From Haliotis rufescens (taxonomy: Eukaryota): 64,000 nt of DNA. The translations under genes and the position numbers were made by a program. The stretch is from positions 41,602,001-41,666,000 of the forward strand of contig NW_025964372.1 of the NCBI RefSeq assembly GCF_023055435.1, written 5' to 3'. Shown here piece after piece: positions 4,271 to 61,731 of the stretch (the stretch's first letter is position 1; each line of letters starts with the position of its first letter). The notes beneath the pieces are model-generated. The model did not search any database and was not told the origin of the DNA. It was given only the letters and a program-made list of their open reading frames with translations.

Positions 4271-4311
<41 letters not shown>

Positions 4312-29297: not shown

Positions 29298-30454
29298 TCA
29301 CTGCAGGATGTTGAGAATGTCCTCCCATTCGATCGTGCATCTCTCTTTACATGTCCATAGTGCTTTGACCAGGTCCAGATAGGTGGCCGAATTTCCATTC
29401 CACTGCTTCCATTTAGTGAGCATAATCAAGATCTGCATATACATTGAACATGGGTGTGCAACTCTGCCCTGTTGGATAGCCACAACGCTGAGCCCAAGTT
29501 CAATCCCGACGTGCTCAAATCCATTCCCGACATGTCTCGCAACAAGGCCGAGATCTCGTGGAGTTACAGGAGTCTTCAGTCTCTCGTTCACACAGCGTTT
29601 TGAACCTACACAGAAATCTGTATTACTTGATGTAACACCAATTCTACCACAAAGGCTCACATAAACAGGTTTCTTTCTGTTTTGTGTGATTGACATGTGG
29701 TATCGAATTAACCTTTATTCATCTCCAATGCTCACCGATATTCCAAATAAGCAATACAAATTGACAGAAAAAAAAGTTGCACAAATCGTCCCATATACAT
29801 ATTTGTCATCATAATAACGATCAAAATATGTTGAAAGTTATGCTGAACACATATGGCATATATTACCAAATTTCTGAAATGAAATCATCAAATCATGATA
29901 AAGAATGTCGCACAAAATTATCAATTTAATGGGCAGTTATAATTTAACGCACCTCTGCTTATGATCTGTTCGATCAGCCCGTTGCTTGACTGGTGCATTC
30001 TCTAGAACGAAAATCATACACAATCAATTGTGTGTTGAGATGATATGCTGTAGTATTTCCTGAAAGGCGTTGAATTCAAATACCGTATTATTCTTCAGGT
30101 GGGATGAAACTTCCACACTATAACACTTTATATGGAATGATAAACTTCCACACAATAACACTTAATATGGAATGATAAACTTCCACACTATAACACTTAA
30201 TATGGAATGATAAACTTCCACACAATAATACTGAATATGGAATGATAAACAGAGACAATGTCTGCCGGAACAGGAGTGAGTATATAAAGACTTTGAACAG
30301 TATTTTCGTTACCTTATATCCACTATTAAGCATACAGAAATTATGTGTACATATATTACTACCATTAGTGTACCTTAATGAACAGATCTAAAAGGGCGTT
30401 ATTAAGACGTACCTGATACTGAAGTCCGGAGAAGCACGAGGCAATATTCCCCAT
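29298..30454 (-). CDS. Myristoylated death-domain-only protein A1 (CRADD/RAIDD-like DD)
   Basis: Exons 30454-30413 (MGNIASCFSGLQYQ), 30001-29953 (RMHQSSNGLIEQIISR), 29605-29298 (GSKR..LGLVARHVGNGFEHVGIELGL..HP..ML.KWK..NG.SAT..L..AL); intron phases 0 and 1, GT-AG. Confidence 0.85.
30105..30250. repeat. About 35-bp minisatellite x4 in A1 intron 1
   Basis: AAACTTCCACACTATAACACTTAATATGGAATGAT; only about 2 units in copy B (51977-52050). Confidence 0.8.
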
Positions 30455-30547
30455 GCTGCCTATACATATATGACACTGACGTACACCACTCTGTGTGTTC
30501 AACTGGTATGACTAAATCAAAAACTCTAGGCTATATGTGAGCACTGC

Positions 30548-30640
30548 GGGATGCCCCGGCACGAGAGGGGACACAACGTCTCACTCTCTCTCGCAATAGC
30601 TTCAACCAAAGATTTAGGAATTTCGGATTTTCGGATTTCA
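30548..30640 (-). promoter_or_regulatory. kB-like site GGGGCATCCC and (TCCGAAAA)2 motif upstream of A1
   Basis: 30548-30557 matches GGGRNWYYCC on the - strand; TTTCGGATTTTCGGATTTC at 30621-30639. Confidence 0.5.
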
Positions 30641-31229
30641 AAACTGATATAAAGGCGGAGTTTGGCAAAATGGTGTGTATGTGAAAGAGATTATAATAGA
30701 CCTATGTGGGGGGTTATACCTCTTATCGTGCATTTTAAGTTTGTTGTCACACACTATGACCAACAATAATAAAGAAATAACATCACAGCAGTGTCGATAA
30801 TTGACGTGTGGTCACAAAAGGAACCTGCGGTTCAGTATGCCGCTCACACATGTAGATAAGAGCAGTGAAGTTGTCACTGCTCTCTTATCTACATGTGTAA
30901 GCGGCAGCCTAAAAACTGAAAGAACAAGACCATAGAATGGATCAGAACTTGATGTTAGACGTGTCAGCAATACGAAAATGTCAATGATTGGACTATAATC
31001 ATGATTGGATCTTCTTCAGCTGTAGTCAAGTCGTCCACACGGACAGACGGACACACTATCATACCTCTTCCAAATGTCCACTGCAAGGTCCACGTATCAT
31101 GAATTTTGTTGACAATAATTTCACATACATTCTAATTGTTGACTTTCTACGCCTTGTAAAACATCTTTCAAACGCAGGTAATGTGATGATCAACAACATT
31201 TCTATTAACAGTTCGTTCGTTACATCCAT

Positions 31230-32765
31230 TTCAGTTTCCGGAATTTCAGATTGCGAATGACAGAAGAACCCAATTAGTTATCACTTGCACATTCTTCCGC
31301 GTGAGGGGCGGTAGGGTAGTCCAGTGGTTATAATGTTCGCTCGTCACGCCTAAGACCCGGGTTCGAATCCTCACATGGGTTCAATGTGTGAAGCCCATTT
31401 CTGGTGCCCACCGCAGTGATATTGCTAAAATATTGCTAAAAGCCTTCACTCATTCTCTCTTCCCCGTGTTCATATGAGGCAGAGTGACTAGTCGTTTCGA
31501 AGGACGGATGGATAATTAGCAATTGCTCAACTATAATGTCTCTCTGGGATGATAATTGTAATAATGTGGTCTCCAGCTAGAGCTGCACTACAGCGTTTCT
31601 ATTGCTCTTGATATGTAGAATATCTGTGAAACAACTGAACATGTATGTTAAGCTAGGGCAGATAAAATGTGTAGCTCTGAAGCCCAGATGACAGTAAATC
31701 ATGCATGCTGACGGTATCTTATATAATTAGTGTGAAACGTAGCATGCAGAAAATGTAATCTTCGATTCGCTGATGTTATTATTCAGTCGCTCAGGAAAGA
31801 TAAATTTCGTTGCACAGACCAAACCTAAGCACCCACCCATCGTCAGCTACACAGAATTATAATTCTACTACATTTGTTACATGTAGGTTACAGTCAACGT
31901 CGCATATCATATCACACACGAGGTGAAGAAACGATATATATATCCTGTTACTATATATGACATTTGTTCCTTTCTCAATACCAGTTTATCATCAGTTGGT
32001 GTGTGGCATTGTAAAGGAATGACATTTGGAAACACACGTACTTGACCTCATGGAATACAATTCTTCAATTACGTCATCTTTAAATAAAACCCGTTCTGTA
32101 ATTGGAATAGATCTCGACTTAACGCATGTCATAAGCATGTGCTCAATGTGTTCAACTTCAGTGAAAGCAAAAGAAAACGCTGAACACAAATGAAATCATT
32201 GTACCGCTCTGTGCCGGTCACTGGTGGTTAATATGAAAGGATGGGTTATCTTTCGTGCCAATTCTCGGGAAAGAACAAAAGACTCAAACACATTCCTTGG
32301 TGTGTGGAACTCAAAGGTTGTATACTTGTAAACATTTTTGATAGCCGTTAATATATAACAGTAATCGCATCTTTACCAGTCTTTCACATGTACAAACATC
32401 AACAATATTGAGAAAGTCCTGCATTCACATATACATGTGCACACATTGAACACATTCATGCACTGGAAACATATGATGCAACCCCTGACGTCCCTCTCTG
32501 ATCCCAGCACATCCTTACCTTATGCTCGTATTATCAGCATACTACACGTAGGTCACCAAACATTGTATTCCTGACACCACCGTAGCGTCATGTCTTTACA
32601 TATAATAGTTCCTTGTATGTCCCACGACACTTAACATGCATGACACGAAGTATGACCCTTATATGTGTCACACTGTGATGGCCGTCTCTTTCACATGCAC
32701 TGCAGTTGATAAAGGAGGCCTACCCGATATCTAAATCCTGACAAGCATGATCTAATATTCCCCAT
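31230..32765 (-). pseudogene. Relic DD-family gene with intact myristoylation exon
   Basis: Exon 32765-32724 reads MGNIRSCLSGFRYR|gt. Exon 2 (~32268-32208) has lost its acceptor and has a TGA. A very decayed DD (IVEQ..HPS; KNxQVIT.WVLL) is interrupted by a SINE. Confidence 0.6.
31305..31457 (+). mobile_element. tRNA-derived SINE (family C) with 11-bp TSD
   Basis: A box TAGTCCAGTGG, B box GGTTCGAATCC; TCTTCC(G/C)CGTG at 31293-31303 and 31458-31468; copy at 53508-53679. Confidence 0.8.
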
Positions 32766-34305
32766 GATCATTTTCCCATCTTCGAATCCGCAGCGTGTGA
32801 TATTGTGACACAGCTAACACAATGTAGCCAGCCCAGTTTATACATGCATACCTGATGGGGGGGGACTCCCTTGTACAATTTACCGGCACACTGTAAATCT
32901 CAGACGTATGTAATCAACAAATTACTGTCATTTCTCTAAATCACGGACTTCGGATTTCCGGATTTTCGGCTATGAATCGCCATGTCATTCAGTTACATAG
33001 TTGTCACAACAGGGGGGATATGTTTTCATTCATACTCAGTGGTTATAGGCTGCTTATCAAATCTTCTCAATGTCAACACCACGTGGAGTAAGCTGTCTAC
33101 TTCAGACGCCGTAAAAGCGTGTTTGATCATAGTATTGAGACGAGAGAAGCCATATTATTACCAATAAAACTCGTATATATGATTTGTTTCTTTTGTATAT
33201 ATGTGTGATGAGGTTTTATTTTACTCGAAAAGCGTAAATTCGTGTGGGATAACACACAATATGTTGATGTTGAGCAGTATATCAATCAATATAAGTTATG
33301 GTGTATCAATTAATTGTCTCCTATCATGGGAATCCGGTAAAGTGGACAGGCACACTGACACGTATGCAGGATTTCTGCACTTTCCTCACTTTCTCCAGTA
33401 ATAATGATGATATTAGTGTTAGATTGTCAGATGTTTTCCTGTCGTTTCCGGAGTGAATGAACTTTTCAATTTCATTCGAAAATATGACGCAATTTTGCAT
33501 ACTCTCACTGCAGATACTAATCTATCTATCGAACTAGGGACTATTCTGGTTTGTCTGAAATGGGGGTTGTCTGTGGGCACTACGCAATAAAACGAAACGA
33601 AACGAAACACACTTCGGGCAGCTATATGGCAGATAGTTCATGCAAGATGTGAACAAGACAATCCGACAATCCGACATAGCATATGACGTTTCGTTTGTTT
33701 GTCAAAATCAGTTCATAACACTGTGGTTGAGACAAGCAGTTAGTTCTAGGTAGGATACGGACCTCATGTTATACTACTCATCAGGCATTTAGTACAGGCT
33801 GCCCCCTGAGGTATATATGAAAACTAAGTGGTATTAAATGTAATGGAGATGAAGGAAACTCCCTTACAAACAACATGAAGGTTTATCTGAAAGCATACGA
33901 CGCCGTTGGGTTCGGATGACACCAACACAGCTGAATGACCAACTCTGACCACCTGATTCGCTCCAGTCAGCTCTTGCAGCAATCATAGGATACTGGTGCC
34001 TTATTCATCACCGGATTATACACAGGGCAGATGTAATGTAGTATAATCACATGATCATCATCAGTAGCATAAGCTGGGACGCTTGAAACTACTATCAGAC
34101 TGCCAGTAACACCACGTAGACTAACATAGACTCAAACATCCATATGTGCAATGTATAAATGAACAAAAAACCCTGTAGTTTTAAAAAGCAACATTTATTC
34201 GTGAAACATAAGGAAATATCAAACATGTACGTTATTCTTAACATATACTAGAGCAGTGAGTCGACAGTGTTGTTGTTATTTTAGGTGTGCACTACGAATG
34301 ACACA

Positions 34306-35429
34306 CTAAGTCGATGGTGATTGGAGAATGTTTAGTATGGCATCCATTTCGAGCGTACATCTACCTCTGCATCTCCACAACGCTCTGACGAGCACAAGGC
34401 CAGTGGCAGATCTGCCATTCCTCTCCTTCCACTTGGTGAGCATGTGTAAGGTCTGCATATAAAGTGAAGTTGGGTGTGAAACTTTGCCTTGTTCGATCAC
34501 CACAAGATTGAGTCCAAGTTCGATTCCAATAGATTCAAACCCGATCCCAATATGATTTGCCACCAGGCTGACACCTTTCTGAGAAACAGGGATTCTCAGT
34601 CTTTCCTCATTTACAGGGCCTACAAAACAAATTAACATCACGTTTTATGATTTAAAAAATGTGAATGAAAATTATAGATGAGTTTGCGTTTTGAGTAATT
34701 TTGTTTTTGTCTTTTCAAACTTACATTTTAACAAACACCTTACAAATCAGAACAGATACGGAAAGTATGTTGCGAGACATAGTACATCTTAATATATGCA
34801 GAGGAGAATACATATTCTCTCCACGTCTACAGTATAGCATATGTGTACTTAAGATATTATGCGACGTTCATATTGCATATTTAACATAATCAAATTGATC
34901 AAGATGAAAAGGACATATTCAATGACATTAAATAAACGAACCTGTCAATGTGACCAATGGATTATATGAACGGATCATCTGGTTGTGTGGCTGGTGAAGT
35001 CTCTGGAAGGGAGATGTTTATACCATCACATGTCATGTATAAAATTAAATGTTGCAAGCTTATGTCATANNNNNNNNNNNNNNNNNNNNNNNNNNNNNNN
35101 NNNNNNNNNNNNNNNNNNNNNNNNNNNNNNNNNNNNNNNNNNNNNNNNNNNNNNNNNNNNNNNNNNNNNNNNNNNNNNNNNNNNNNNNNNNNNNNNNNNN
35201 NNNNNNNNNNNNNNNNNNNNNNNNNNNNNNNNNNNNNNNNNNNNNNNNNNNNNNNNNNNNNNNNNNNNNNNNNNNNNACACACACACAGAAATAAAGACA
35301 GACTGTATAAGACCATGCAACCACAAACGTGCACATCGACATGCAAACAATGAGCTCGTTAGTTTCTAATAATTAAAGTTCACCTACCCGATACCCAAAT
35401 CCGGACCAGCATGACACATAATTCCCCAT
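34306..35429 (-). CDS. Myristoylated death-domain-only protein A2
   Basis: Exons 35429-35388 (MGNYVSCWSGFGYR), 35002-34942 (RLHQPHNQMIRSYNPLVTLT), 34619-34306 (GPVNEERL..DD..QSPST). Intron 1 contains an N-gap. Confidence 0.85.
35070..35277. other. Assembly gap
   Basis: Run of N. Confidence 0.99.
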
Positions 35430-35492
35430 TGTCGGCTCTGTACATACGTTTTACCCTCTGCTTTACTGATCTGCTGTCCGTTCAATCGCTTG

Positions 35493-35526
35493 CTCTTTAT
35501 ATGTAGGCTTTGTGAAGGGGATTTCC
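35493..35526 (-). promoter_or_regulatory. TATA box (ATATAAAG) and kB site (GGGGATTTCC, 35517-35526) upstream of A2
   Basis: Consensus match at a position conserved across paralogues. Confidence 0.55.
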
Positions 35527-35745
35527 CTAAACTTGTCGACAAAAATTACTGTTGCAGATAAGCGGCCGCGAGTTTATCGACGGGCGTTTATTGAAGCAAG
35601 ACGCGAGAACGCGAGGTCTTTCCCAGGGTGTAGCATCTAAGAAGACTGAGAGGTAATGCATGCTATACATCATAAATCCGAAAATCCGACTTGTTGTACA
35701 TTCACTTCACAATGTCAACTAGTTAGCGGAAACGTCTTTAGGCTG

Positions 35746-35961
35746 NNNNNNNNNNNNNNNNNNNNNNNNNNNNNNNNNNNNNNNNNNNNNNNNNNNNNNN
35801 NNNNNNNNNNNNNNNNNNNNNNNNNNNNNNNNNNNNNNNNNNNNNNNNNNNNNNNNNNNNNNNNNNNNNNNNNNNNNNNNNNNNNNNNNNNNNNNNNNNN
35901 NNNNNNNNNNNNNNNNNNNNNNNNNNNNNNNNNNNNNNNNNNNNNNNNNNNNNNNNNNNNN
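35746..35961. other. Assembly gap
   Basis: Run of N. Confidence 0.99.
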
Positions 35962-40409: not shown

Positions 40410-41573
40410 TTACACAGACACAGTGGACGGTCCCTGAAGGATGTTGAGAATGTCCTCCCACTCAATGGTACACTTGTCATTGCATCTCCACAGTGCTCTG
40501 ACGAGGAACAGGCTGGTTGCAGTTCTTCCGTTCTTCTCCTTCCACTTTGTGAGCATGTGTACAACTTGCATGTACAGTGAACATGGATGTGCAAAAGTCA
40601 CTTGTTCGATAACCACGAGAGTAAGTCCAAGTTCGATGCCAACAGACTCGAACCCGATCCCGATGTGACTTGCAACAAGGCTGAGATCTCTTCCAGATAC
40701 AGGAGTATCCAACATCTCTTCATTTACAGCATATGCTTGGTTCCAGTGTGTTGGCCCTACAACATTAAACTCACAATAAACTACCTATTTACTTGTGTTC
40801 ATTTTGTTTGATAGATGATGTTACAACATTCAGTTCACATTCATTATTCCAAATTAGCTTCACTAAACAAAAAAATATGGTACATACATTAAGTAACGTA
40901 AACAGAAATCATTAGGTACACATAGAACTAAACTCCCTGAATTATAATAAGACAAGCAGATTGTTTAAATTCAATAAAACTAAAACATCAAACTAAAAGG
41001 CGACTGTGCTTGTTGTAAGAGGCGACTAACAGGATCGGGTGGTAAGGCTCGCTAACATGTTTGTTGCATGTCATCGTATCCCAATTGCGTAGATCGATAC
41101 TCATGATGTTAATCGCTGGATTATCTGGTCCAGACTCGATTATTTACAGATCGCCGTCATATAGCTGGAATATTGCTCAGTGCGACATTAAACAACAAAC
41201 AAACAAAAAACAAGCAAACAAAATAACAAACAATGTGATTTAACGTACATGTAACTCTCTCTGTCAGATTGGGTTCATTTTGGCAGTTCATCGAGTTCTC
41301 TGAAGTGGACAGTCTCTGGAATCGAAAAAACACAGTTTCAAACACGATTGATAGCTACACCAGCATAGCAATAAAACAATAAGGATAATCTTACATAAAC
41401 TAAACAAGACAATGCAATGACAAATTCTCTTGAACATGTACACACGCATAATAAACATTAACACGCTAATGTTCGAATAGGGAAAGCACGTGAAATATGC
41501 CTATGGCTGTATACATAACATCTTGACCCACCTGATATCGGAATCTTGGCCAGCATGAAACAGTATTACCCAT
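40410..41573 (-). CDS. Myristoylated death-domain-only protein A3
   Basis: Exons 41573-41532 (MGNTVSCWPRFRYQ), 41315-41249 (RLSTSENSMNCQNEPNLTERVT), 40756-40410 (WPTHWNQAYAVNEEMLDTP..DD..GPSTVSV). Confidence 0.85.
40997..41215 (+). mobile_element. SINE (family A) in A3 intron 2, absent from B3
   Basis: Matches 15064-15320; (AAAC)n tail. Confidence 0.8.
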
Positions 41574-41879
41574 GCTGTCTGTAATTATGCCTCTACTTCA
41601 CACATGTGTATCCCACAGCCAGCTGACACAATCTGATAGTTTCGACTGTACTGATATAGGCTTTATATATCGGAATAGCATAAGGGGATTCACCTTTTTG
41701 TTGACAAGATGTGGTGTGGTACATTTGCAGTCACAGGCATATGCTACAGTCAACTTACAACCGATTTTCGGATCGCAGATCGCGGAGTTCGGATTTAAGG
41801 ATTTCATTCGCCATATCAGGCTGATGGGTATGGGTAAAAAAGGCCGATGATGATGCAGGTGAAGGGACAAGAACTTAGT

Positions 41880-43762: not shown

Positions 43763-44259
43763 CTATTTCAATTTATTACTTGCCCGTGAAGAGATCCCAA
43801 TGTGACTTTCAGATACAGGGATATTCAGCCTCTCTTCATTCACAGCATATGGTTCGTTCCCGGGTGTTGTACCTACAAGAATCATCTCACAATAAGCATG
43901 TGTTCACATGTGAGGTGAGGTGAAATTGGGTTTGACGTCGCGTCCAAGATTCCTGCACTTATATAGCGACGTGCATGCACGTGTATGTGTGTGTGTGGGT
44001 GCTTGTACTAGTCCGGACTGACGCCGATTTATAGTGCTAGCTCACTGAGATACCATGCCGCAGTTTAACATGAATACCCCACTCAGACACAGTATACTGA
44101 CTCCGAGCCGACCAGTCCTTGTTTTAGCCCCTTAATGCCGAGCGCCAGACAGGGTAACAACAAGTACAATCTTTTCACGTCTTTTTGTATGACGCGGCCC
44201 GGGATCGAACCCTGGACCTTCCGCTCTCCGGGCGGACGCTCTACCACAAGACCACGGAG

Positions 44260-44311
<52 letters not shown>

Positions 44312-44877
44312 GTATATTTACTGTCAATGTTTAAATTCCCTATCAATATTCTACGTTATTTTAACTTATCTTAAGATTAAATTCACTCAAAAACCAAAGA
44401 GAAAAACATATTGTTAATGTATCACAACGTGTAAAGAAAACGTTTGGGTGGACGCACAGACAATGGGAATAATGTCAAGCTTGCATCTGATAAAGCATAA
44501 CGTGACACACTATCCATATCTTACATTTAGTAAATCGATAAATGCGACTGAACGTACCTCTCGGTTCGAGCTGATGGTTATAATAGCAGGTTATGTGGTC
44601 GTCTGTCTTGGACATTTTCTGGAATCAAAATGAACACAATGAGGCATATTCCTGGTGACGCTTGGATCCCACATATTGTAAACTTTAAACCAGTTTTAAA
44701 CCACGATTGAGAGTTGTAGCGTCACAAGAAGTAGGGTAATGTTACATTCACTAGTATGCATAAATAAACATAAAGTCGCAATTGCACGTGTACATATTCA
44801 TTAATTGTTAAGAAAATACGTGAAGGGAATATTACCTGATATCTGAATCTTGACCAGTATGAAACAATATTACCCAT
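43763..44877 (-). pseudogene. DD-truncated paralogue A4 (myristoylation exon and linker intact, DD deleted)
   Basis: Exons 44877-44836 (MGNIVSYWSRFRYQ), 44618-44558 (KMSKTDDHITCYYNHQLEPR), 43872-43763 (GTTPGNEPYAVNEERLNIPVSESHIGISSRASNKLK*). Confidence 0.75.
43915..44260 (-). mobile_element. tRNA-derived SINE with Meta-like central domain
   Basis: GGTCTTGTGGTAGAGCG..GGTTCGATCCC head followed by GTCATACAAAAAGAC..CCTGTCTGGCGCTCGGCATTAAGGG; related fragments at ~27230-27330 and ~49100-49200. Confidence 0.7.
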
Positions 44878-44992: not shown

Positions 44993-45090
44993 GGGGATTC
45001 CCCCTGCTTGCTGTGCGGGAATTGTTGTAGGCCCTGTGAGGCACAGGTGACAATCTTGTTCCAGCTCTCGGACTGCGGATTTTCGGGTTT
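44993..45090 (-). promoter_or_regulatory. kB site GGGGATTCCC and TCCGAAAA-type motif upstream of A4
   Basis: Perfect kB consensus at 44993-45002; CGGATTTTCGG near 45076. Confidence 0.55.
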
Positions 45091-51168: not shown

Positions 51169-52278
51169 TCACTGCAGGATGTTGAGAATGTCCTCCCATT
51201 CGATCGTGCATCTCTCTTTACATGTCCATAGTGCTTTGACCAGGTCCAGATAGGTGGCCGAACTGCCATTCCACTGCTTCCATTTAGTGAGTATAATCAA
51301 GATCTGCATATACATTGAACATGGGTGTGCAACTCTGCCCTGTTGGATAGCCACAACGCTGAGCCCAAGTTCAATCCCGATATACTCAAATCCCATCCCG
51401 ATATGTCTCGCAACAAGTCCGAGATCTCGTGGAGTTACAGGAGTCTTCAGTCTCTCGTTCACACAGCGTTTTGAACCTACACGGAAATCTGTATTACTTG
51501 ATGTAACACTAATTCTACCACAAAGGCTCACATAAACAGGTTTCTTTCTGTTTTGTGTGATTGACATGTGGTATCGAATGAACCTTTATTCATCTCCAAT
51601 GCTCATCGATATTCCAAATAAGTAATACAAATTGACAGAAAAAGAAGTTGCACAAATCTTCCCATATACATATATGTCATCATAATAACGATCAAAATAT
51701 GTTGAAAGTTATGCTGAACACATATGGCATATATTGCCAAATTTCTGAAATGAAATCATCAAATCATGATAAAGAATGTCGCGCAAAATTATCAATTTAA
51801 TGGGCAGTTATAATTAACGCACCTCTGCTTATGATCTGTTCGATCAGCTCGTTGCTTGACTGGTGCATTCTCTAGAACGAAAAACACACACAATCAATTG
51901 TGTGTCAAGATGACATGCTGTAGTATTTCCTGAAAGGCGTTGAACTCAAATACAGTATTATTCTTCAGGTGGGATCAAACTTCCCCTCTATAACACTTAA
52001 TATGGGATGATAAACTTCCACACAATAATACTGAATATGGAATGATAAACAGAGACAATGTCTGCCGGAACAGGAGTGAGTATATAAAGACTTTGAACCG
52101 TATGTTCGTTACCTTATATCCACTATTAAGCATATATACAGAATGCCACACGTGTAGTGTTAAATGATGTGTACATATATTACTACCATTATTGCACCTT
52201 AATGAACATATCTAAAAGGGCGTTATTAAGACGTACCTGCCACTGAAGTCCGGAGAAGCACGAGGCAATGTTCCCCAT
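51169..52278 (-). CDS. Myristoylated death-domain-only protein B1
   Basis: Exons 52278-52237 (MGNIASCFSGLQWQ), 51871-51823 (RMHQSSNELIEQIISR), 51476-51169 (DD). Confidence 0.85.
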
Positions 52279-53429
52279 GCTGCCTATTCATGTATGACAC
52301 TGACGTACACCACTCTGTGTGTTCCAACTGGTATGACTAAATCAAAACCTCTAAGCTATATGTGAGCACAGCGGGACGCCCCGGCACGAGAGGGGACACA
52401 ACGTCTCACGCTCTCTCGCAATAGCTTCAACCAAAGATTAAGGAATTTCGGATTTTCGGATTTCAAAACTGATATAAAGGCGGAGTTTGGCAAAATGGTG
52501 TGTATGTGAAAGAGATTATAATAGACCTATGTGGGGGTTATACCTCTTATCGTGCATTTTAAGTTTGTTGTCACACACTATGACCAACAATAATAAAGAA
52601 ATAATATCACAGCAGTGTCGATAATTGACGTGTGGTCACAAAAGCAACATGCGGGTAAGTATGCCTCTTACACATGTAGATAAGAGAGCAGTGACAACTT
52701 CACTGAGATGCCTTTCTCCACTACGTCCAGCTGTTCAGTCAATAACCAAGCCAGCCCTTTCAAGGTTTCATGACTTATATGTTAGTCTTGCAACGAAGAC
52801 AATAGACATGGGAATATTGTCACAAAAATAGTCTTTTAAAAAGGATAATAGGTCTCAATCTAAATAAGTATCTAGAAATCATGACAATATCTGTGATAAT
52901 GCAAGACAAAACTAAATACATGTTGTGTACAAAAGCTGTGGTACATTGTGGGTACTGGGTGACCTGGTCAACGTGTAGGATATATGTGGGCGTTGTTTTG
53001 GCATTGATATGGAATACCGGCTAGCATAAATATGTAGCATGTTTAAGGAACATATTGCTGTCTACAGCTATTTTCTATATATATTAGGCTTTGTAAACTG
53101 CAATCAGCAGCCTAAAAACTGAAAGAACAAGACCATAGAATGGATCAGAACTTGATGTTAGACCTGTCAGCAATACGAAAATGTCCATGATTGGAATATA
53201 ATCAAGATTGGATCTTCTTCAGCTGAAGTCAAGTCGTCCACACGGACAGACTATCATACCTCCTCCAAATGTCCACTGCAAGTTCCACGTATCATGAATT
53301 TTGTTGACAATAATTTCACATACATTCTAATCGTTGACTTTCTTTGTTCCTACGCCTTGTAAAACATCTTTCAAACGCAGGTAATGGGATGATCAACAAC
53401 ATTTCTATTAACAGTTCGTTCGTTACATC

Positions 53430-54928
53430 AATTTTCAGTTTCCGGAATTTCAGATGGCTAATGACAGAAGAACCCATTTAGTTATCACTTGCCCATTCTT
53501 CCCCGTGAGGGGCGGTAGGGTAGTCCAGTGGTTACACTGTTCGCTCGTCACGCCTAAGACCCGGGTTCGAATCCTCAGATGGGTTCAATGTGTGAAGCCC
53601 ATTTCTGGTGCCCACCGCCGTGATATTGCTAAAATATTGCTAAAAGCTGCGTAAACATTACACCATCACTCATTCTCTCTTCCCCATGTACATATGAGGC
53701 AGAGTGACGAGTTGTTTCGAAGGACGGATGGATAATTAGCAGTTGCTCAACTTTAATGTCTCTCTGGGATGATAATTGTAATAATGTGGTCTCCAGCCAG
53801 AGCTGCACTACAGCGTTTCTATTGCTGTTGATATGTAGAATATCTGTGAAACAACTGAACATGTATGTTAAGCTAGGGCAGATAAAATGTGTAGCTCTGA
53901 AGCCCAGATGACAGTAAATCATGCATGCTGACGGTATCTTATATAATTAGTGTGAAACGTAGCATGCAGAAAATGTAATCTTCGATTCGCTGATGTTATT
54001 ATTCAGTCGCTCAGTCAGCTATACAGAATTATAATTCTACTACATTTGTTACATGTAGGTTACAGTCAACGTCGCATATCATATCACACACGAGGTGAAG
54101 AAACGATTTATATATCCTGTTACTATATATGACATTTGTTCCTTTCTCAATACCAGCATATCATCAGTTGGTGTGTGGCATTGTACAGGAATGACATTTC
54201 GAAACACACGTACTTGACCTCATGGAATACAATTCTTCAATTACGTCATCTTTAAATAAAACCCTTTCTGTAATTGGAATAGATCTCGACTAAACGCACC
54301 TCATAAGCATGTGTTCAATGTGTTCAACTTCAATGAAAGAAAAAGAAAACGCTGAACACAAATGAAATCATTGTACCGCTCTGTGCCGGTCACTGGTGGT
54401 TAATATGAAAGGATGTGTTATCTTTCGTGCCAATTCTCGGGAAAAAACAAAAGACTCAAACACATTACTTGGTGTGTGGAACTCAAAGGTTGTAGACTTG
54501 TAAACATTTTTGATAGCCGTTAATATATAACAGTAATCGCATCTTTACCAGTCTTTCATATGTACAAACACCAACAATATTGAGAAAGTCCTGCATTCAC
54601 ATATACATGTGCACACATTCGAACACATTCATGCACTGGAAACATATGCTGCAACCCCTGACTTCCCTCTCTGATCTCAGCACATCCTTACCTTATGCCT
54701 GTATTATCAGCATACTACACGTAGGTCACCAAACATTGTATTTCAGACACTACTGTCTTTATATATGATAGTTCCTTGTTTGTCCAACGACACTTAACAT
54801 GCATGATACGAAGTATGACCCTTATATGTGTCACACAGTGATGGCCGTCTCTCTAACATGCACTGCAGTTGATAAAGAAGGCCTACCCGATATCTAAATC
54901 CTGACAAGCATCACCTAATATTCCCCAT
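53430..54928 (-). pseudogene. Relic DD-family gene (copy B), with stop in exon 1
   Basis: 54928-54887 reads ATG GGG AAT ATT AGG TGA (MGNIR*); same SINE-C insertion in the DD relic. Confidence 0.6.
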
Positions 54929-56479
54929 GATCATTATCCCATCTTCGAATCCGCAGCGTGTGATATTGTGACACAGTTACCACAACGTAGCCAGCCAAGT
55001 TTATACATGCATGACTGATGGTAGGGGACTCCCTTGTACAATTTACCGGCACATTGTAAATCTCAGACGTATGTAACCAACAAATTACTGTCATTTCTCC
55101 AAATAACGGACTTCGGATTTCCGGATTTTCGGCTATGAATCGCCATGTTATTCAGTTACATAGTTGTCACAACAGGGGGGATATATTTTCATTCATACTC
55201 AGTGGTTATAGGCTGCTTATCAAATCTTCTCAATGTCAACACCTCGTGGAGTAAGCTGTCTACTTCAGATGCCGTAAAAGCTTGTTTGATAGCCGTGTGA
55301 TGAATGGAGATCAGGTTGTAGAAAAAGGAGGAACGTTTTTACCATAAGTGACTACAGTATTGAGACGAGAGACGTCATATAATACCGATAAAAGTCTTAT
55401 ATGATTTATTTCTTTTGTATATAGGTGTGATGAGGATTTATTTTACTCGAAAAGTCTTAAATCGTGTGGGATAACAGACGAAATGTTGATGTTGAGCAGT
55501 ATAATCAATCAATATAAGTTATGGTGTATCAATTAATTGTCTCCTATCATGGGAAACCGGTAAAGTGGACGGCACACTGACACGTATGCAGGCTTCCTGC
55601 ACTTTCCTCACTTGCTCCAGTAATAATGATGATATTAGTGTTAGATTGTCAGATGTGCTCCTGTGGTTTCCGGAGTGAATGAGCGTTTCAATTTCATTCG
55701 AAAATATGACCCAATTTTGTTAAGCAACTGGCATACTCTCACTGCAGATACTAATCTATCGAACTAGGGACTATTCTGGTTTGTCTGAAATAAGGAGTGG
55801 CTGTGGGCACTACGCAATAAAATTTAACGAAACGAAACACACTTCGGGCAGCTATATGGCAGATAGTTTATGCAAGATGTGTACAAGACAATCCGACAAT
55901 CCGACATGGCATATGACGTTTCGTTTATTTGTCATGTTATACTACTCATCAGGCATTTAGTACAGGCTGGGCCCTGAGGTATATATGAAAACTAAGTGGT
56001 ATCAAATTTAATGGAGATGAAGGGAACTCCCTTACAAACATAATGAAGGTTTATCTGAAAGCATACGACGCCGTTGGGTTCGGATGACACACACACAGCT
56101 GAGTGACCAACTCTGACCACCTGATTCGCTCCAGTCAGCTCTTGCAGCAATCATAGGATACTGGTGCCTTATTCATCACCGGAATATACACAGGGCAGAT
56201 GCAATGTAGTATAATCACATGATCATCATCAGTAGCATAAGCTGGGACGCTTGGAACTACCATCAGACTGTCAGTAACACCATGTAGACTAACATAGACA
56301 CAACATCCATATGTTCAATGTATAAATGAACAAGAAAAAACTATAGTTTAAAAAGCAACACTTATTCGTGAAACATAAGGAAATATCAAACATGTACGTT
56401 ATTCTTAACATGATCCATTTACTAGAGCAGTGAGCCAACAGTGTTGTTGTTAGGTCAGGTGTGCACTACGAATGACACA

Positions 56480-57772
56480 CTAAGTCGATGGTGATTGGAG
56501 AATGTTTAGTATGGCATCCATTTCGAGCGTACATCTACCTCTGCATCTCCACAACGCTCTGACGAGCACAAGGCCAGTGGCAGATCTGCCATTCCTCTCC
56601 TTCCACTTTGTGAGCATGTGTAAGGTCTGCATATAGAGTGAATGTGGGTGTGAAACTTTGCCTTGTTCGACCGCCACAAGATTGAGTCCAAGTTCGATTC
56701 CAATAGATTCAAACCCTATCCCAATATGATTTGCCACCAGGCTGACACCTTTCTGAGAAACAGGGATTCTAAATCTATCCTCATTTACAGGGCCTACAAA
56801 ACAAATTAACATCACGTTTTATGATTTAAAAAATGTGAATGAAAATTATAGATGAATCTTGCGTTTTGAGTAATTTTGTTTTTGTCTTTTCAAAATTTCA
56901 TTTTAACACACACCTTACAAATCAGAACAAATACGGGAATATAGTACATCTTAATATATGCAGAGGAGAATACATATTCTCTCCACGTCTACGGTATAGC
57001 ATATGTGTACTTAAGATATTATGCGACGTTCATATTGTATATTTAACATAATCAAATTGATCAAGATGAAAAGGACATATTCAATGACATTAAATAAACA
57101 AACCTGCCAATGTGACCAATGGATTATATAAACGGATCATCTGGTTGTGTGGCTGGCGTAGTCTCTGGAAGGGAGATGTTTAGACCATCACATGTCATGT
57201 ATAAGATTAAATGTTGCAAGCTTATAAGATTAAATGTTGCAAGCTTATGTNNNNNNNNNNNNNNNNNNNNNNNNNNNNNNNNNNNNNNNNNNNNNNNNNN
57301 NNNNNNNNNNNNNNNNNNNNNNNNNNNNNNNNNNNNNNNNNNNNNNNNNNNNNNNNNNNNNNNNNNNNNNNNNNNNNNNNNNNNNNNNNNNNNNNNNNNN
57401 NNNNNNNNNNNNNNNNNNNNNNNNNNNNNNNNNNNNNNNNNNNNNNNNNNNNNNNNNNNNNNNNNNNNNNNNNNNNNNNNNNNNNNNNNNNNNNNNNNNN
57501 NNNNNNNNNNNNNNNNNNNNNNNNNNNNNNNNNNNNNNNNNNNNNNNNNNNNNNNNNNNNNNNNNNNNNNNNNNNNNNNNNNNNNNNNNNNNNNNNNNNN
57601 NNNNNNNNNNNNNNNNNNNNNNNNNNNNNNNNNNNNNNNNNNNNNNNNNNNNNNNNNNNNNNNNNNNNNNACGCGCACATCGACATGCAAACAATGTACT
57701 CGTTAGTTTCTAATAATTAAATTCACCTACCCGATACCCAGATCCGGACCAGCATGAGACATAATTCCCCAT
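56480..57772 (-). CDS. Myristoylated death-domain-only protein B2
   Basis: Exons 57772-57731 (MGNYVSCWSGSGYR), 57164-57104 (RLRQPHNQMIRLYNPLVTLA), 56793-56480 (DD). Confidence 0.85.
57251..57670. other. Assembly gap
   Basis: Run of N at the same intron position as the 35070 gap. Confidence 0.99.
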
Positions 57773-58748
57773 TGTCGGCTCTGTACATACGTTTTACCGT
57801 CTGCTGTGGGGATCTGCTGTCCGTTCAATCGCTCGCTATTTATGTAGGCTTTGTGAAGGGGATTTCCCTGAACTCGTTGAATGATTGTATACGGTATAGG
57901 TCAGGTCATCTTCAAGTCGGATTGTACGAATTTGTTCATCCACTATAGAATGTACTGTTTGATAATAACAGCTTCATGGACACTGACATTTTATTCGAGT
58001 CATCCCATACTACAAATAGCAGACTTGTACATTTGTCTTTAATGAATAATAGACTTGTTGGAATTGACATGCAATGACATAACTATGTTGCCTGAAATGA
58101 CTATTGAATGAAATTAAAACATCCTTGAAACATATATATGTATAACGTAAAACATTGTTATGTGAGTATTCAGTTTAGAGTACAGGGGGATGAACGGTGT
58201 AAGAATCATTTATCTCACAATAATTTCTGTTGCAGAAAACCAAAACAGCCGCGTGTTTATAGACGGGCGTTTATTGAAGCAAAACGCGAGAGCCGCGAGG
58301 TCGCGACACTTGAACAATGTCGCGTTCTCGTGATTTTAAGTCAATTGCCTATACAGTTATATGTCACTATTTTCGAAAGCGCGAGAACGCGAGATCGCGA
58401 CACTTGACCAATGTTGCAATCTCGCGTTCTCGTGCTTTTGTGTCAATTACCCATACAGTTATATGTAAATTCATTTGCCAAATCTCGCGTTCACGGGATC
58501 CCGCATTCTCCTGTTTAGGGCATAGTTAGCTCGTTTCGCTGTGATTAGACAAGGGTAAAACAACAGTATTATGCATGCAATATCTTTCCCAGGGTGTAGC
58601 AACTAAGATGACTGAGAGGTTATGCATGCTATACATCATAAATCCGAAAATCCGACTTGTTGTACATTGTACAATGTCATCTAGTTAGCGGAAACGTCTT
58701 AAGGCTGTGTGTGTGTGTTGTTTTGTTTGTGTGTGTCCGTGTATGTGC

Positions 58749-58798
<50 letters not shown>

Positions 58799-60800
58799 CG
58801 TGCGTGCGTGAGTGCGTTCACGAGTGCGTGCGTGTGTGTGTGTGAACGTACAAATGACCAACAACAACTTCAAACATTTCATGAAGATTTTTCTGCAGAA
58901 TGTTTCCTTCGCAAAAAAATAAATTTGAAAAGGACCACATTGTATTATATCCAGGAAATACTCAATGGGACAAAATTACGAGTTGAATGGGCTTGAAAAC
59001 ATGTAGAGGTACAGAAGAGGGAACAGTAGTGGTGGTGTGGATTGGCATACTGGGGAAATGATACAATCATGTTGTTAACCAAAGTAAGCTGTCTCGTCAT
59101 GTAAGTGAGCACCAACACACTTGAAGGTTGTCCTTTTCAATAGTACACAATATAAGATGAACATATATAGGTGAGTAAGTCAGTTCGCATTGAGAGCGAA
59201 ATATGACATGCTGCCTTTGAAAGTGATTTGCAATTCTATCCCATACTGTGACCTTTACAGGGAGATTTCACACCTCCTTATTCACTTACTTAAATGGATC
59301 GGGTGGTCATGCTTGGTGACTTGGTTGACAGCGTGGCGTAGTAACCCGATGATAGTGATCCCTGGATTCTCTGGTCGAGACTCGATACTTTACAGGCCAC
59401 CGTGATATGTCAGGAGTATTGCTGGTGGCGGCATTTTGCAACAACAAATAGCTTTTATTAAATTTGTGAGAGTGGCGGTTGCTTCTGGTAGAGCATTACA
59501 TGCTAATCATTCTGTGGATTACCTGGTGTCATCGCTGATTTTCATTGATTCATTCATTTACTTTTCATCACTATTTTGATATTTTCCATGCATAAAGAAA
59601 GTGACAGTATTTCAGGCTTCTTTATAATTGAGATCATTACTTGTAATTGTGTCATTCGAATTCTTTATCAAGCTAGTTGTAAAATCTAAAAGGGTATATT
59701 ATTGAATACATAAAATCGGATTTTCGAAACAACTAGAATTTTTACCACTACAAATCTGTTGCAATGGTACATAGATATGAGTGCAGTCACAACTTTATTT
59801 ACGCATGTTTCGTCATTACGCCAATCTTTTCCGCTATCCCTTTGCAGTCAGCATGCAAAAGCTTTCACATATTATCCTTCGATAGTTGTCTAAATGTTTT
59901 ATGGTAAAAGTGTAGAGGACTGGAGAGGATAGCCATTTCTTTGTCTGTGACGGGTGCCACCAGTGGGACAGGATACCTTTTCGCGAATTTCTGGTATCAT
60001 CTCCATGTGATTTCATACCTGAGAACCACTACCGCCCATCACCAGTATTTGCAAACTTCCAACCAGGAAATATTCTTACAAATAGAATACAGCTACTATA
60101 GAAAGTAAAAAACAAATTGTCGTCCATAATCAATCAGCAAGATTCTACGACCGGCAAACCCTTGTGAAATTGTTCAAAATAAGAGACAACAGATAAACAG
60201 CTCACTTGGAACAACATAACATGAATACTTTGACTGTTCAATCATGACCGGACATTGTAGAGTCAAATCATATTGTGAGACGCAATTATGTCTCCGGATT
60301 TTCGGATTACGGATGACGTTTAGGGCGCATGTAATCATCCCTCGCTAGTTCTTCCTCAAATATCACAAGAGACAGAAAGACAAGTAGTTACAAAAGGCAT
60401 CACAGCAATTTATTAAAAGCATTTATTCTCAACACATACAAATAGAATCACAATGTATTACAAACGGAAAAGATATTAATGTTCAAATGAAGAGTGTTCA
60501 GTTTGCAACTTGAGGAAACAGAAAATCAATCAGATCAGTCAGGATTCCAAATTATGTACAAAAGTCTCAGTGAACCTAGCATCGCGACTCGATATTTCAA
60601 AACGGGAACCCAATCAATCAATGATAACTGTACATGAGAAGACTGTTCAGTGCAGCGCTAGTATATGAGAGAACATAAATGTAGGCATGATTTCTCTGTA
60701 TGTTGTCGGGGAAACTCAGTGAAGCATTACTTATATACCCACTCGTGTATTCACAGCGTAAAGCAAGACAGCGTCAGGAGCATACAGCTCTCCGACTTGA

Positions 60801-61731
60801 TTACACAGACACAGTGGACGGTCCCTGAAGGATGTTGAGAATGTCCTCCCACTCAATGGTACACCTGTCATTGCAACTCCACAGTGCTCTGACAAGGACC
60901 AGGCTGGTTGCAGTTCTCCCGTTCTTCTCCTTCCACTTTGTAAGCATGTGTACAACTTGCATGTATAGTGAACATGGATGTGCGAAAGTCACTTGTTCGA
61001 TAACCACGAGAGTAAGTCCAAGTTCGATGCCAACAGACTCGAACCCGATCCCGATGTGACTTGCAACAAGGCTGAGATCTCGTCCCGACACAGGAGTATC
61101 CAGCATCTCGTCATTTACAGCATATGCTTGGTTCAGGTGTCTTGGCCCTACAACATTAAACTCACAATAAACTACCTATTTACTTGTGTACATTGTGTGT
61201 GATGGATGTAACAACACTCAGTTCGCTTTCATTATTCTAAATTAGCCTCACTAAACAAAAACAAAAAATACGACCCGTCCATCAATTCATCCACTCATCC
61301 ATATGGTAATGTGGAAAAAATCATTGTGGTACTCATAGAGCTATACTTCCTCAAATATTATAAGACAAACAGATCGTTTCAATTCAATGAAACTAAAAAA
61401 ATGAAACAATGTGTTCCAACGTACCTCTCTCTGCCGGGTCGCGTTTATAATGGCAATTTATCGAGTTCCCTGTGGTGGTCAGTCTCTGGAATCGAATAAA
61501 CACAGTTTTAAACACGATTGATAGCTACACTATCATAGCAATAGATCATCTTACATAAACTAAACTAAACAAAACAATGCAATAACAAATGCACGTGTAC
61601 ACACGCCGACGCGCATTATAAACATTGATACGTTAACGTTCGAATCGGGAAAAGACGTGAAATAAGCCTGTGGCTGTATATATACCCACCTGATATCGGA
61701 ATCTTGACCAGCATGAAACATTATTAGCCAT
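60801..61731 (-). CDS. Death-domain-only protein B3 (Gly2->Ala, predicted non-myristoylated)
   Basis: Exons 61731-61690 (MANNVSCWSRFRYQ), 61485-61425 (RLTTTGNSINCHYKRDPAER), 61147-60801 (GPRHLNQAYAVNDEMLDTP..DD). Confidence 0.85.

What the first reader, a model, noticed from the sequence alone, without database searches (positions are those of the whole stretch)
29298..61731. Tandem family of small N-myristoylated death-domain-only genes
Seen: six intact - strand genes share one 3-exon plan. A 42-nt exon encodes MGNIASCF, MGNYVSCW, MGNTVSCW and so on. It is followed by a 49-67 nt fast-diverging linker exon and one exon with a CRADD/RAIDD-like death domain, and nothing else (about 130-150 aa). 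The ORF track misses the first two exons. Established: MGxxxS is the N-myristoyltransferase consensus, and a nearby Cys (here Cys7) is a typical S-palmitoylation site. DD adaptors such as MyD88, FADD, RAIDD and IMD normally carry a second module. Inference: these are lipid-anchored DD proteins that either nucleate DD filaments at membranes or act as decoys of DD signalling. I do not know of a described family with this architecture.
Basis: partly seen in the sequence, partly recalled or inferred. Interest (0 to 1): 0.9.

Follow-up and report, generated by a model that had tools for sequence, protein, structure and literature searches.

The report
Abalone lipid-anchored death-domain-only gene array
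The six small genes are real. They belong to a very large abalone-only tandem family of proteins that carry a predicted fatty-acid membrane anchor, a short variable linker and a single death domain, each behind an NF-kB-type promoter, which makes this an undescribed likely immune-signalling family whose function is untested.

Summary
Six minus-strand genes share one GT-AG three-exon plan: a 42-nt exon, a linker exon of 49, 61 or 67 nt, and a death-domain (DD) exon. They encode 132-151 aa. All four assembly gaps lie in intron 1 of two genes or between genes. One gene (B1) equals a RefSeq red-abalone protein exactly.

The six are three paralogue types in a block duplicated in tandem. They are a small part of a 0.33-1 Mb array with at least 150 DD-exon matches and 109 canonical first exons, although the assembly is partly redundant.

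Gly2, Asn3, Ser6 and Cys7 are kept across copies despite synonymous codon changes. dN/dS between types is 0.15-0.25. The modelled DD is closest to the RAIDD DD, but there is no CARD, so these are not CRADD orthologues.

New here:
- A kB consensus site plus a TATA-like box lies 60-140 nt upstream of 20 of 26 first exons.
- The DD genes are co-amplified with a variable ankyrin-repeat gene.
- Close relatives were found only in Haliotis, and no paper on the family was found.

The scan's first readers noted the same family on other pieces of this genome.

The parts
29298..30454 (-). Gene A1, 132 aa. Exon 1 is 30454-30413 (MGNIASCF...), exon 2 is 30001-29953 (49 nt), exon 3 is 29605-29298 (DD plus stop).
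   Evidence: GT-AG at all junctions. Pfam Death 25.3 bits.
34306..35429 (-). Gene B1, 138 aa. Exon 1 is 35429-35388 (MGNYVSCW...), exon 2 is 35002-34942 (61 nt), exon 3 is 34619-34306. Assembly gap 35070-35277 lies in intron 1.
   Evidence: All three exon peptides are found exactly in the RefSeq H. rufescens protein P0168, 138 aa.
40410..41573 (-). Gene C1, 151 aa. Exon 1 is 41573-41532 (MGNTVSCW...), exon 2 is 41315-41249 (67 nt), exon 3 is 40756-40410.
   Evidence: Pfam Death 23.8 bits.
51169..52278 (-). Gene A2, 132 aa. Exon 1 is 52278-52237, exon 2 is 51871-51823 (49 nt), exon 3 is 51476-51169.
   Evidence: Pfam Death 21.5 bits, just under the 22.6 cut-off. DD exon 93% aa identical to A1.
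56480..57772 (-). Gene B2, 138 aa. Exon 1 is 57772-57731, exon 2 is 57164-57104 (61 nt), exon 3 is 56793-56480. Assembly gap 57251-57670 lies in intron 1.
   Evidence: Pfam Death 26.4 bits.
60801..61731 (-). Gene C2, 149 aa. Exon 1 is 61731-61690 (MANNVSCW, so Gly2 is replaced by Ala), exon 2 is 61485-61425 (61 nt), exon 3 is 61147-60801.
   Evidence: Pfam Death 25.8 bits.
32724..32765 (-). Orphan first exon D1 (MGNIRSCL..., GT donor). It has its own kB site at 32860-32870 and no DD exon downstream.
54887..54928 (-). Orphan first exon D2, the copy of D1, carrying an in-frame stop at codon 6.
43793..44877 (-). Relic gene E. The first exon at 44877-44836 is intact (MGNIVSYW, Tyr7). Only a 24-aa remnant of the DD exon survives at 43843-43793.
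35517..35527 (-). kB consensus site (GGGAAATCCCC) 98 nt upstream of the B1 ATG, followed by a TATA-like box.
57858..57868 (-). kB consensus site 96 nt upstream of the B2 ATG.
61840..61850 (-). kB consensus site (GGGGAATCCCC) 119 nt upstream of the C2 ATG. TATATAAA lies at -94.
41684..41694 (-). Near-consensus kB site (GGTGAATCCCC, one mismatch) upstream of the C1 ATG. TATATAAA lies at -96.
30548..30557 (-). kB consensus site (GGGGCATCCC) 103 nt upstream of the A1 ATG. The A2 counterpart has one mismatch.
44993..45003 (-). kB consensus site 125 nt upstream of the relic E first exon.

Best explanation
What it is: these are real, separately transcribed three-exon genes of a Haliotis-restricted family. 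The genome is almost surely the red abalone, H. rufescens. Each protein has three parts. First comes an N-terminal MGNxxSC motif, predicted to receive myristate on Gly2 and palmitate on Cys7. Then come about 30-45 disordered, fast-changing linker residues. Last is one RAIDD/ankyrin-type death domain, and nothing else.

The six window genes are three paralogue types in a tandemly duplicated block. That block lies inside an array of dozens to about a hundred copies, co-amplified with a variable ankyrin-repeat gene on the other strand. Most copies carry a kB site and a TATA-like box just upstream of the first exon.

Inferred mechanism: Rel/NF-kB switches the genes on. The proteins are acylated and held on the cytosolic face of membranes. 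There the DD contacts DD-bearing partners. Having no effector module, they most likely act as membrane-localised competitors or gatekeepers of DD assemblies, by analogy with dominant-negative DD-only fragments and with the CARD-only, PYD-only and DED-only regulators.

Shown: gene structure, fold class, motif conservation, promoter motifs and array structure. Inferred: lipidation, induction, partners and the sign of the effect.
For: Gene models:
- All junctions are GT-AG and all frames are kept.
- Linker-exon lengths of 49, 61 and 67 nt differ by multiples of three in all 15 copies checked, with no stops.
- B1 equals RefSeq P0168 exactly. Independent NCBI models in H. cracherodii, H. rubra and H. 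rufescens also start MGN.

Death domain:
- Pfam Death matches.
- The family profile hits the ankyrin-3 DD at 6e-10 and the CRADD DD at 2.4e-7.
- The AF2 model shows a six-helix bundle with pLDDT above 93 and a disordered N-terminal 35 residues.
- The Foldseek top hit is the RAIDD DD, target-normalised TM 0.87 and rmsd 1.7 A.

Constraint:
- dN/dS between types is 0.15-0.25.
- Gly2 is kept in 24 of 25 copies through GGG, GGT and GGC. Asn3 is kept in 25 of 25, Ser6 in 22 of 25 through TCG and TCA, and Cys7 in 21 of 25.
- 27 of 29 further first exons, found at 30 other loci that include some duplicate placements, start MGN.

Start codon:
- In B and C types an in-frame stop lies 7-8 codons upstream, with no in-frame ATG in between.
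- A at -3 and G at +4 are present in all copies.

Promoter:
- GGGRNWYYCC occurs 21 times in the window against 2.4 expected.
- 20 of 29 distinct sites in 256 kb lie 60-140 nt upstream of a first exon, and 20 of 26 first exons have one.
- This element is the best conserved block in upstream DNA that is otherwise only 52-56% identical between types.

Array:
- At least 150 DD-exon matches.
- 109 canonical first-exon matches against 1 for the control pattern.
- The ankyrin gene recurs six to seven times between DD clusters.

Restriction to Haliotis: only four clusters score below E 1e-30, all from Haliotis. The next hit is at 8e-24.
Against: - No RNA or protein evidence could be obtained here.
- Lipidation is predicted from motif and conservation only.
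- Natural variants break the motif: C2 has Ala2, G-type copies have Leu6, E-type copies have Tyr7, and the H. asinina model has Phe6 with an upstream extension.
- NCBI models of some A- and E-type genes start at a Met in exon 2, without exon 1.
- Recent duplicates show dN/dS from 0.1 to above 1, with exons no better conserved than introns in the A and B pairs. Some copies may therefore be drifting.
- About a third of the copies in the 256 kb examined are broken.
- kB motifs in paralogous promoters are not independent observations.
- The homo-oligomer prediction gave no answer.
Confidence: 0.55

Rival explanations
1. Positive membrane nucleators. The anchored DDs concentrate in two dimensions and seed helical DD assemblies, recruiting DD kinases or caspase adaptors to membranes. 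They would then amplify rather than damp signalling, as a DD counterpart of the myristoylated TIR adaptor TRAM.
For: The architecture evidence is the same as for the main reading. From my own knowledge, not checked here: forcing Drosophila Tube or Pelle to the membrane with a myristoylation tag activates Toll signalling. kB promoters also fit feed-forward genes.
Against: There is no effector module. From established knowledge, DD-only fragments of FADD, MyD88 and RAIDD usually act as dominant negatives. Self-assembly received no support in the one prediction run, which is not evidence either way.
Confidence: 0.25
2. Mostly decaying or non-functional copies. On this reading the array is a by-product of segmental amplification driven by the neighbouring ankyrin gene or by repeats, and the N-terminal motif has no lipidation role.
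For: About a third of the copies in 256 kb are frameshifted, truncated or orphan exons. Recent duplicates show dN/dS near or above 1 in some pairs, and exons are no better conserved than introns in the A1/A2 and B1/B2 pairs. Natural G2A, Leu6 and Tyr7 variants exist.
Against: dN/dS between types is 0.15-0.25. Indels in the linker exon preserve the frame in all 15 copies checked. Gly2, Asn3 and Ser6 are kept through synonymous codon changes. Splice sites, Kozak context and the kB/TATA promoter are conserved across types whose flanking DNA has otherwise diverged. Orthologous types are kept in H. cracherodii.
Confidence: 0.1
3. The small models are fragments of larger genes. Further coding exons would lie upstream, downstream or in the gaps, so the proteins would not be DD-only.
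For: Sequence alone cannot rule out an acceptor just upstream of the ATG, since 'cag' precedes it in A and C types. The H. asinina model P0006 carries a 59-aa N-terminal extension. Gaps sit in intron 1 of B1 and B2.
Against: The stop codon closes each DD exon, and AATAAA hexamers follow within 107-551 nt. A kB site and TATA-like box lie 60-140 nt upstream of the ATG. In-frame stops lie 3-8 codons upstream in several copies. NCBI models in three species are 128-149 aa and start at MGN. The AF2 model needs nothing more for a complete DD.
Confidence: 0.07

Closest known systems
CRADD/RAIDD death domain (PIDDosome adaptor)
   Same: It is the closest solved fold: 2o71, target-normalised TM 0.87, rmsd 1.7 A, 25% identity. 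The family profile hits the CRADD DD at 2.4e-7. NCBI names some members 'CRADD-like'.
   Different: There is no CARD, so there is no route to a caspase. The N-terminus is an acylation motif plus a disordered linker. The family forms its own clade apart from other small Haliotis DD proteins. It is restricted to one genus and hugely amplified. CRADD is reported as a conserved gene in molluscs, whose tree follows the species tree (PMC11463336).
TRAM/TICAM2 (N-myristoylated TIR-only sorting adaptor)
   Same: The logic is the same: a fatty-acyl anchor, a short linker and one homotypic interaction domain with no enzymatic part. This comparison rests on my own knowledge.
   Different: The interaction domain here is a DD, not a TIR. 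There is no sequence relationship. Abalone has many copies where vertebrates have a single TRAM gene.
Death-fold-only regulators: CARD-only (COP/INCA/ICEBERG), PYD-only (POP1-3) and DED-only (cFLIP-short, viral FLIPs)
   Same: These are a single death-fold domain with no effector. They arose by lineage-specific tandem duplication, several are inducible by inflammatory signals, and they act as decoys of oligomeric platforms. This comparison rests on my own knowledge.
   Different: Those are CARD, PYD or DED domains, are soluble and have 1-4 copies. Here the domain is a DD, a membrane anchor is predicted and there are dozens of copies. Decoy action has not been tested.
Ankyrin / PIDD / UNC5-type death domains (ZU5-ZU5-UPA-DD supramodule)
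   Same: The best sequence match among solved structures is the ankyrin-3 DD, at E 6e-10. The ankyrin-G, ankyrin-1 and PIDD DDs rank among the top structural hits.
   Different: There are no ZU5 or UPA domains, and the proteins are only 132-151 aa.
Drosophila Tube (DD adaptor without a catalytic domain) and engineered myristoylated Tube/Pelle
   Same: Both place a DD adaptor at the plasma membrane as the key step of a Rel pathway. This comparison rests on my own knowledge.
   Different: Tube is brought to the membrane through MyD88, not by its own lipid. It carries Tube repeats. No orthology is suggested.

Membership tests
Death domain superfamily (Pfam PF00531) | Sequence match to the Death profile at or above the gathering score | tested here: met
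   Five of six DD exons score 23.8-26.4 bits against the 22.6 cut-off. A2 scores 21.5 bits. The family profile hits the ankyrin, CRADD, FADD and PIDD DDs in the PDB.
Death domain superfamily (Pfam PF00531) | Six-helix antiparallel bundle | tested here: met
   The AF2 model of P0007 (the B-type orthologue) has six helices over residues 48-134 with pLDDT above 93. All top Foldseek hits are DDs. This is a prediction, not a solved structure.
CRADD/RAIDD orthologues | N-terminal CARD followed by a C-terminal DD | tested here: not met
   The products are 132-151 aa. Residues 1-35 are modelled as disordered, and no CARD was found by Pfam or by fold.
N-myristoyltransferase substrates | Initiator Met followed by Gly2, with the pattern G-{EDRKHPFYW}-x(2)-[STAGCN]-{P} | tested here: met
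   Five of the six window genes fit the pattern. C2 has Ala2. Gly2 is kept in 24 of 25 copies and Ser6 in 22 of 25 in the 256 kb examined. The pattern is quoted from my own knowledge of PROSITE PS00008.
N-myristoyltransferase substrates | Myristate actually attached to Gly2, and palmitate to a nearby Cys | not testable with these tools
   This needs metabolic labelling or mass spectrometry.
Death-fold-only decoy regulators (COP/POP/FLIP type) | A single death-fold domain, no effector module, and origin by lineage-specific tandem duplication | tested here: met
Death-fold-only decoy regulators (COP/POP/FLIP type) | Inhibits assembly of a parent platform by competing for its death-fold partner | not testable with these tools
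   No partner is known. The homo-oligomer prediction gave no answer.
Rel/NF-kB target genes | A kB site (GGGRNWYYCC) in the proximal promoter | tested here: met
Rel/NF-kB target genes | Rel binding and Rel-dependent induction | not testable with these tools
No expression paper names these loci.

The most novel reading that the evidence does not exclude
The array may be a co-amplified two-component immune module. The variable ankyrin-repeat gene, read by another first-stage reader as carrying a Ulp1-type protease part, would be the sensor. The kB-driven, lipid-anchored DD-only proteins would be its membrane-tethered partners or substrates. For example, the fast-evolving linker could be a cleavage 'tripwire' that releases the DD from the membrane to seed or block a death-fold platform. 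Such a recognition and signalling system has not been described in animals.
Probability: 0.12. Interest if true: 0.85.

Novelty: new variant of a known kind. Interest (0 to 1): 0.62.

Why it matters
Death domains are the wiring of Toll, TNF-receptor and caspase-2 signalling. All well-known DD adaptors carry a second module, and none is known to be anchored by its own lipids.

A family that joins a dual-acylation signal to a bare DD, sits behind kB promoters and has been amplified to dozens of copies in one genus suggests a new way of regulating DD platforms at membranes. It also gives molluscan immunology a concrete set of genes to test.

Abalones suffer major infectious diseases, so an inducible, copy-number-variable immune locus could also serve as a marker for breeding. 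The assembly redundancy found here shows that the locus needs long-read re-assembly before copy number can be used.

Tried and rejected
Only 256 kb of the array was read as sequence. The remainder on the chromosome contig and the C6 and C72 scaffolds are known only from search tables and from 30 short loci.
- Complex prediction on three copies of the B1-type DD returned no answer, which is no evidence either way.
- Literature searches for a myristoylated or palmitoylated DD protein, for CRADD in abalone and for the RefSeq locus names found nothing on this family.
- 'CRADD orthologue' was rejected because there is no CARD.
- 'Uncollapsed haplotype' as the cause of the in-window duplication is judged unlikely. 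The two blocks differ by about 5-8% or more, the differences are uneven between genes (dS 0.046, 0.057 and 0.13), and there are large indels. True assembly redundancy does exist between scaffolds.
Exons were searched by reference one at a time, and full-length comparisons used database proteins that the tools returned.

Full report
OBSERVATION

ORF listing and Pfam show six minus-strand ORFs ending at 29298, 34306, 40410, 51169, 56480 and 60801. They match the Death domain profile PF00531 at E 8e-6 to 2.5e-4. Five of the six are above the gathering score.

A six-frame scan finds a 42-nt ATG exon 0.6-1.0 kb upstream of each, on the same strand. They read MGNIASCF for A1 and A2, MGNYVSCW for B1 and B2, and MGNTVSCW for C1. 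C2 reads MANNVSCW, so it has Ala in place of Gly2.

Reading the sequence gives one middle exon per gene: 49 nt in A1 and A2, 61 nt in B1, B2 and C2, and 67 nt in C1. Every junction is GT-AG and every frame is kept. The products are 132, 138, 151, 132, 138 and 149 aa.

ASSEMBLY GAPS (tested first, as asked)

- Gaps 35070-35277 and 57251-57670 lie inside intron 1 of B1 and B2, next to a TG run. Complete exons with proper splice sites sit on both sides.
- The three exon peptides of B1 are each found exactly in the RefSeq red-abalone protein P0168, which has the same 138-aa length as the three-exon model (XP_046344830.2 / XP_048247914.1). That independent model therefore needs nothing from the gap.
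- Gaps 35746-35961 and 37207-37410 are intergenic.
- I did not try to fill any gap.

WHAT THE SIX GENES ARE

A self-comparison shows that about 26-43.7 kb and 46.2-63.5 kb are two copies of one block. They are mostly 90-95% identical, falling to 78-87% near the far end. The six genes are therefore three paralogue types, each present twice:

| Comparison | DD aa identity |
|---|---|
| A1 vs A2 | 93% |
| B1 vs B2 | 95.5% |
| C1 vs C2 | 97% |
| between types | 62-72% |

The window also holds two orphan first exons, at 32765 and at 54928 (its copy, with a stop codon). A relic gene has its first exon at 44877 and a 24-aa DD remnant.

The contig is 54,236,743 bases long, the same as the contig that carries H. 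rufescens RefSeq proteins of this family. The genome is therefore almost surely the red abalone.

SIZE OF THE FAMILY

- A profile search of the whole assembly returns at least 150 DD-exon matches (150 scored of 400 candidates). All but one are on the minus strand of three scaffolds: the chromosome-scale contig C594 at 41.59-41.92 Mb, the 1.03-Mb scaffold C6 and the 0.24-Mb scaffold C72.
- A strict first-exon pattern (ATG GGN AAY, six free bases, TCN TGY TKS) occurs 109 times against once for the control pattern. Nearly all matches are on the same three scaffolds.
- Part of this count is assembly redundancy. C6:1-2150 is identical to window 60508-62657, and three further C6/C594 locus pairs differ at 0-1 of about 3,300 bases. 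The true copy number therefore lies somewhere between a few dozen and about a hundred.

In 256 kb of contiguous chromosome sequence that I could read (C594 41,570,001-41,826,000):

- There are 30 DD-exon-like hits at about 26 places, all on the minus strand, and 26 first-exon copies.
- About two thirds of the genes look intact. The rest are frameshifted, truncated or orphan exons.
- Further types exist besides A, B and C. E-type copies have Tyr7, G-type copies have Leu6, and an F type is also present.

EVIDENCE THAT THE GENES ARE UNDER SELECTION

- Between types, dN/dS on the DD exon is 0.15-0.25, with dS of 0.76-1.5.
- The linker exon changes fast. Aligned bases of C1 and C2 are 77% identical there, against 95% in exon 3. 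Yet in all 15 copies checked it keeps an AG acceptor, a GT donor, no stop and a length of 49, 61 or 67 nt, all of which leave the same reading phase.
- Among the 25 ATG-bearing first exons in the 256 kb:

| Residue | Kept in | Codons used |
|---|---|---|
| Gly2 | 24 of 25 | GGG 13, GGT 10, GGC 1 |
| Asn3 | 25 of 25 | AAT, AAC |
| Ser6 | 22 of 25 | TCG, TCA |
| Cys7 | 21 of 25 | TGC |

- At the 30 best other loci, some of which are duplicate placements, 29 have a first exon and 27 of these start MGN.
- Recent duplicates tell less. Their dN/dS ranges from 0.08 to above 1 on a handful of changes. In the A and B pairs the exons are no better conserved than the introns.

THE PROTEIN

- A family profile hits solved DDs: ankyrin-3 at 6e-10, CRADD at 2.4e-7, and then ankyrin-2 and ankyrin-1, FADD and PIDD.
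- I built an AF2 model of the B-type orthologue P0007 from a 42-row alignment. It gives a six-helix bundle over residues about 40-135 with pLDDT above 93. The N-terminal 35 residues are disordered.
- Foldseek ranks the RAIDD DD first (2o71, target-normalised TM 0.87, rmsd 1.7 A, 25% identity). The ankyrin-G, FADD, PIDD, TRADD and RIPK1 DDs follow.
- No CARD or any other module is present, so the NCBI label 'CRADD-like' describes the domain, not the protein.

THE N-TERMINUS

- MGN[ITYN][AVS]SC fits the N-myristoyltransferase pattern, and a Cys next to it is a typical palmitoylation site. I quote both rules from established knowledge. They were not tested here.
- The ATG has A at -3 and G at +4 in every copy. 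B and C types have an in-frame stop 7-8 codons upstream, with no in-frame ATG in between.
- NCBI models from H. cracherodii (P0003, P0007), H. rubra (P0004) and H. rufescens (P0005, P0168-P0171, P0173, P0174) start at this Met.
- Counter-examples exist. P0001, P0002 and P0172 start in exon 2, and the H. asinina model P0006 is extended upstream and has Phe6.

NEW FINDING: THE PROMOTER

- The 120 nt upstream of the ATG contain GGGAAATCCCC (B), GGGGAATCCCC (C2, E), GGGGCATCCC (A1) or GGGAGTCCCC (D). A TATA-like box follows about 20 nt later.
- The kB consensus GGGRNWYYCC occurs 21 times in the window, counting both strands, against 2.4 +/- 1.8 in shuffles.
- In the 256 kb, 20 of 29 distinct sites lie 60-140 nt upstream of a first exon, a zone that makes up 0.8% of the sequence. 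Of the 26 first exons, 20 have one.
- The copies are paralogues, so these are not independent events. However, the element is the best conserved block in upstream DNA that is otherwise only 52-56% identical between types.
- This suggests Rel/NF-kB control. It also places the transcription start just upstream of the ATG, which argues against hidden upstream coding exons. Abalones do have Rel-homology proteins (PMC11103948).
- A first-stage reader of another piece of this genome noted kB-driven copies too. I had found the motif before reading that note.

NEW FINDING: THE NEIGHBOUR GENE

Three ORFs of the plus-strand ankyrin-repeat gene at about 8-26 kb of the window recur six to seven times in the 256 kb. 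Each recurrence lies in a 20-25 kb space between DD-gene clusters, at 86-93% aa identity. The higher-order repeat is therefore one ankyrin gene plus two to six DD genes on the other strand. This supports the 'two-part locus' lead from other first-stage notes. Whether the two products interact is unknown.

DISTRIBUTION

- An exhaustive HMMER search of 1.84 billion cluster representatives gives four clusters below E 1e-30, all from Haliotis. The next hit, at 8e-24, is a multi-DD amphioxus protein.
- Among the 150 best hits, no small DD protein outside this family starts with Met-Gly.
- In a tree, the family forms its own clade (support 80/90), apart from other small Haliotis DD proteins. It has distinct A, B and E groups and an unresolved set of C-type copies. 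The B type has an H. cracherodii orthologue.
- H. rubra and H. asinina members show that the family spans the genus.

MECHANISM

Shown: three-exon genes, a RAIDD-type DD fold, a conserved acylation-type N-terminus, a kB/TATA promoter, and tandem co-amplification with an ankyrin gene.

Inferred: the proteins are induced through Rel, acylated and held on membranes, where the DD engages DD partners. They have no effector part, and DD-only fragments of known adaptors act as dominant negatives. I therefore favour a gatekeeper or decoy role (about 0.55 for the whole picture) over a nucleating adaptor role (0.25). The one complex prediction I ran, three copies of the DD, gave no answer.

COMPARISON AND NOVELTY

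The domain belongs to the DD superfamily. The proteins are not CRADD orthologues. The logic resembles TRAM (a myristoylated adaptor with a single interaction domain) and the CARD-only, PYD-only and DED-only regulators. A lipid-anchored, DD-only, kB-driven and massively amplified family was not found in the literature searched. I class it as a new variant of a known kind.

LIMITS

Exons were used by reference, and full-length work used proteins that the tools returned.

Noticed in passing
window 8997-25892 (+); also L-loci of C594 41,675,014-41,822,343: The plus-strand ankyrin-repeat gene next to the DD genes recurs six to seven times in 256 kb, at 86-93% aa identity. Each copy lies between DD-gene clusters, so the array unit is one ankyrin gene plus several DD genes.
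   Followed up: partly
window 60508-62657 = G000:C6:1-2150 (L023); L005/L006, L014/L015, L027/L028: The unplaced 1.03-Mb scaffold C6 starts with sequence identical to the chromosome contig (0-1 mismatches per about 3.3 kb). Constant coordinate offsets between matching hits suggest that C72 likewise duplicates the end of C6. Copy counts from the assembly are therefore inflated, and the locus is not resolved.
   Followed up: partly
L033:9013-9201 (-) and L035:7138-7349 (-), just outside the window: A second, much more divergent DD exon (43-45% identical to C1) sits at the upstream end of DD clusters, next to the ankyrin gene. It may correspond to the 117-aa H. cracherodii protein P0016.
   Followed up: no
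window 33854-33863, 47824-33, 56022-31: Three kB-consensus sites do not lie next to a recognised first exon. 33854 and 56022 sit at matching positions in the two copies of the duplicated block.
   Followed up: no
window 21809-24308: A 99-bp tandem periodicity at 84-87% identity corresponds to 33-aa ankyrin repeats in one long ORF (20494-23247; Pfam Ank E 3e-129).
   Followed up: partly
window 10560-11227 and 17074-17948: Arrays with a period of about 170 bp are present in inverted orientation about 6 kb apart, at 90-96% identity. In translation they read as runs of PMG.
   Followed up: no
window 4271-5005 (+): An ORF has weak matches to zf-RVT and RNase H. It is probably a retrotransposon fragment.
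   Followed up: no
L035:4865 (C594:41,670,865, -) and L005, L006, L022: E-type first exons reading MGNIVSYC are followed by GC rather than GT. This is either a rare GC-AG intron or a dead copy.
   Followed up: no
protein P0024 (H. rubra, 136 aa): This more distant DD-only abalone protein has no Met-Gly start. It has a Cys cluster (CTLCGCC) followed by YRRYQ, which resembles the end of the family's first exon. It may be an older, palmitoylation-only relative.
   Followed up: no
window 35430-35450 and 57773-57793 (-): B-type leaders carry an out-of-frame upstream ATG 16 nt before the main ATG, in a weak context.
   Followed up: no
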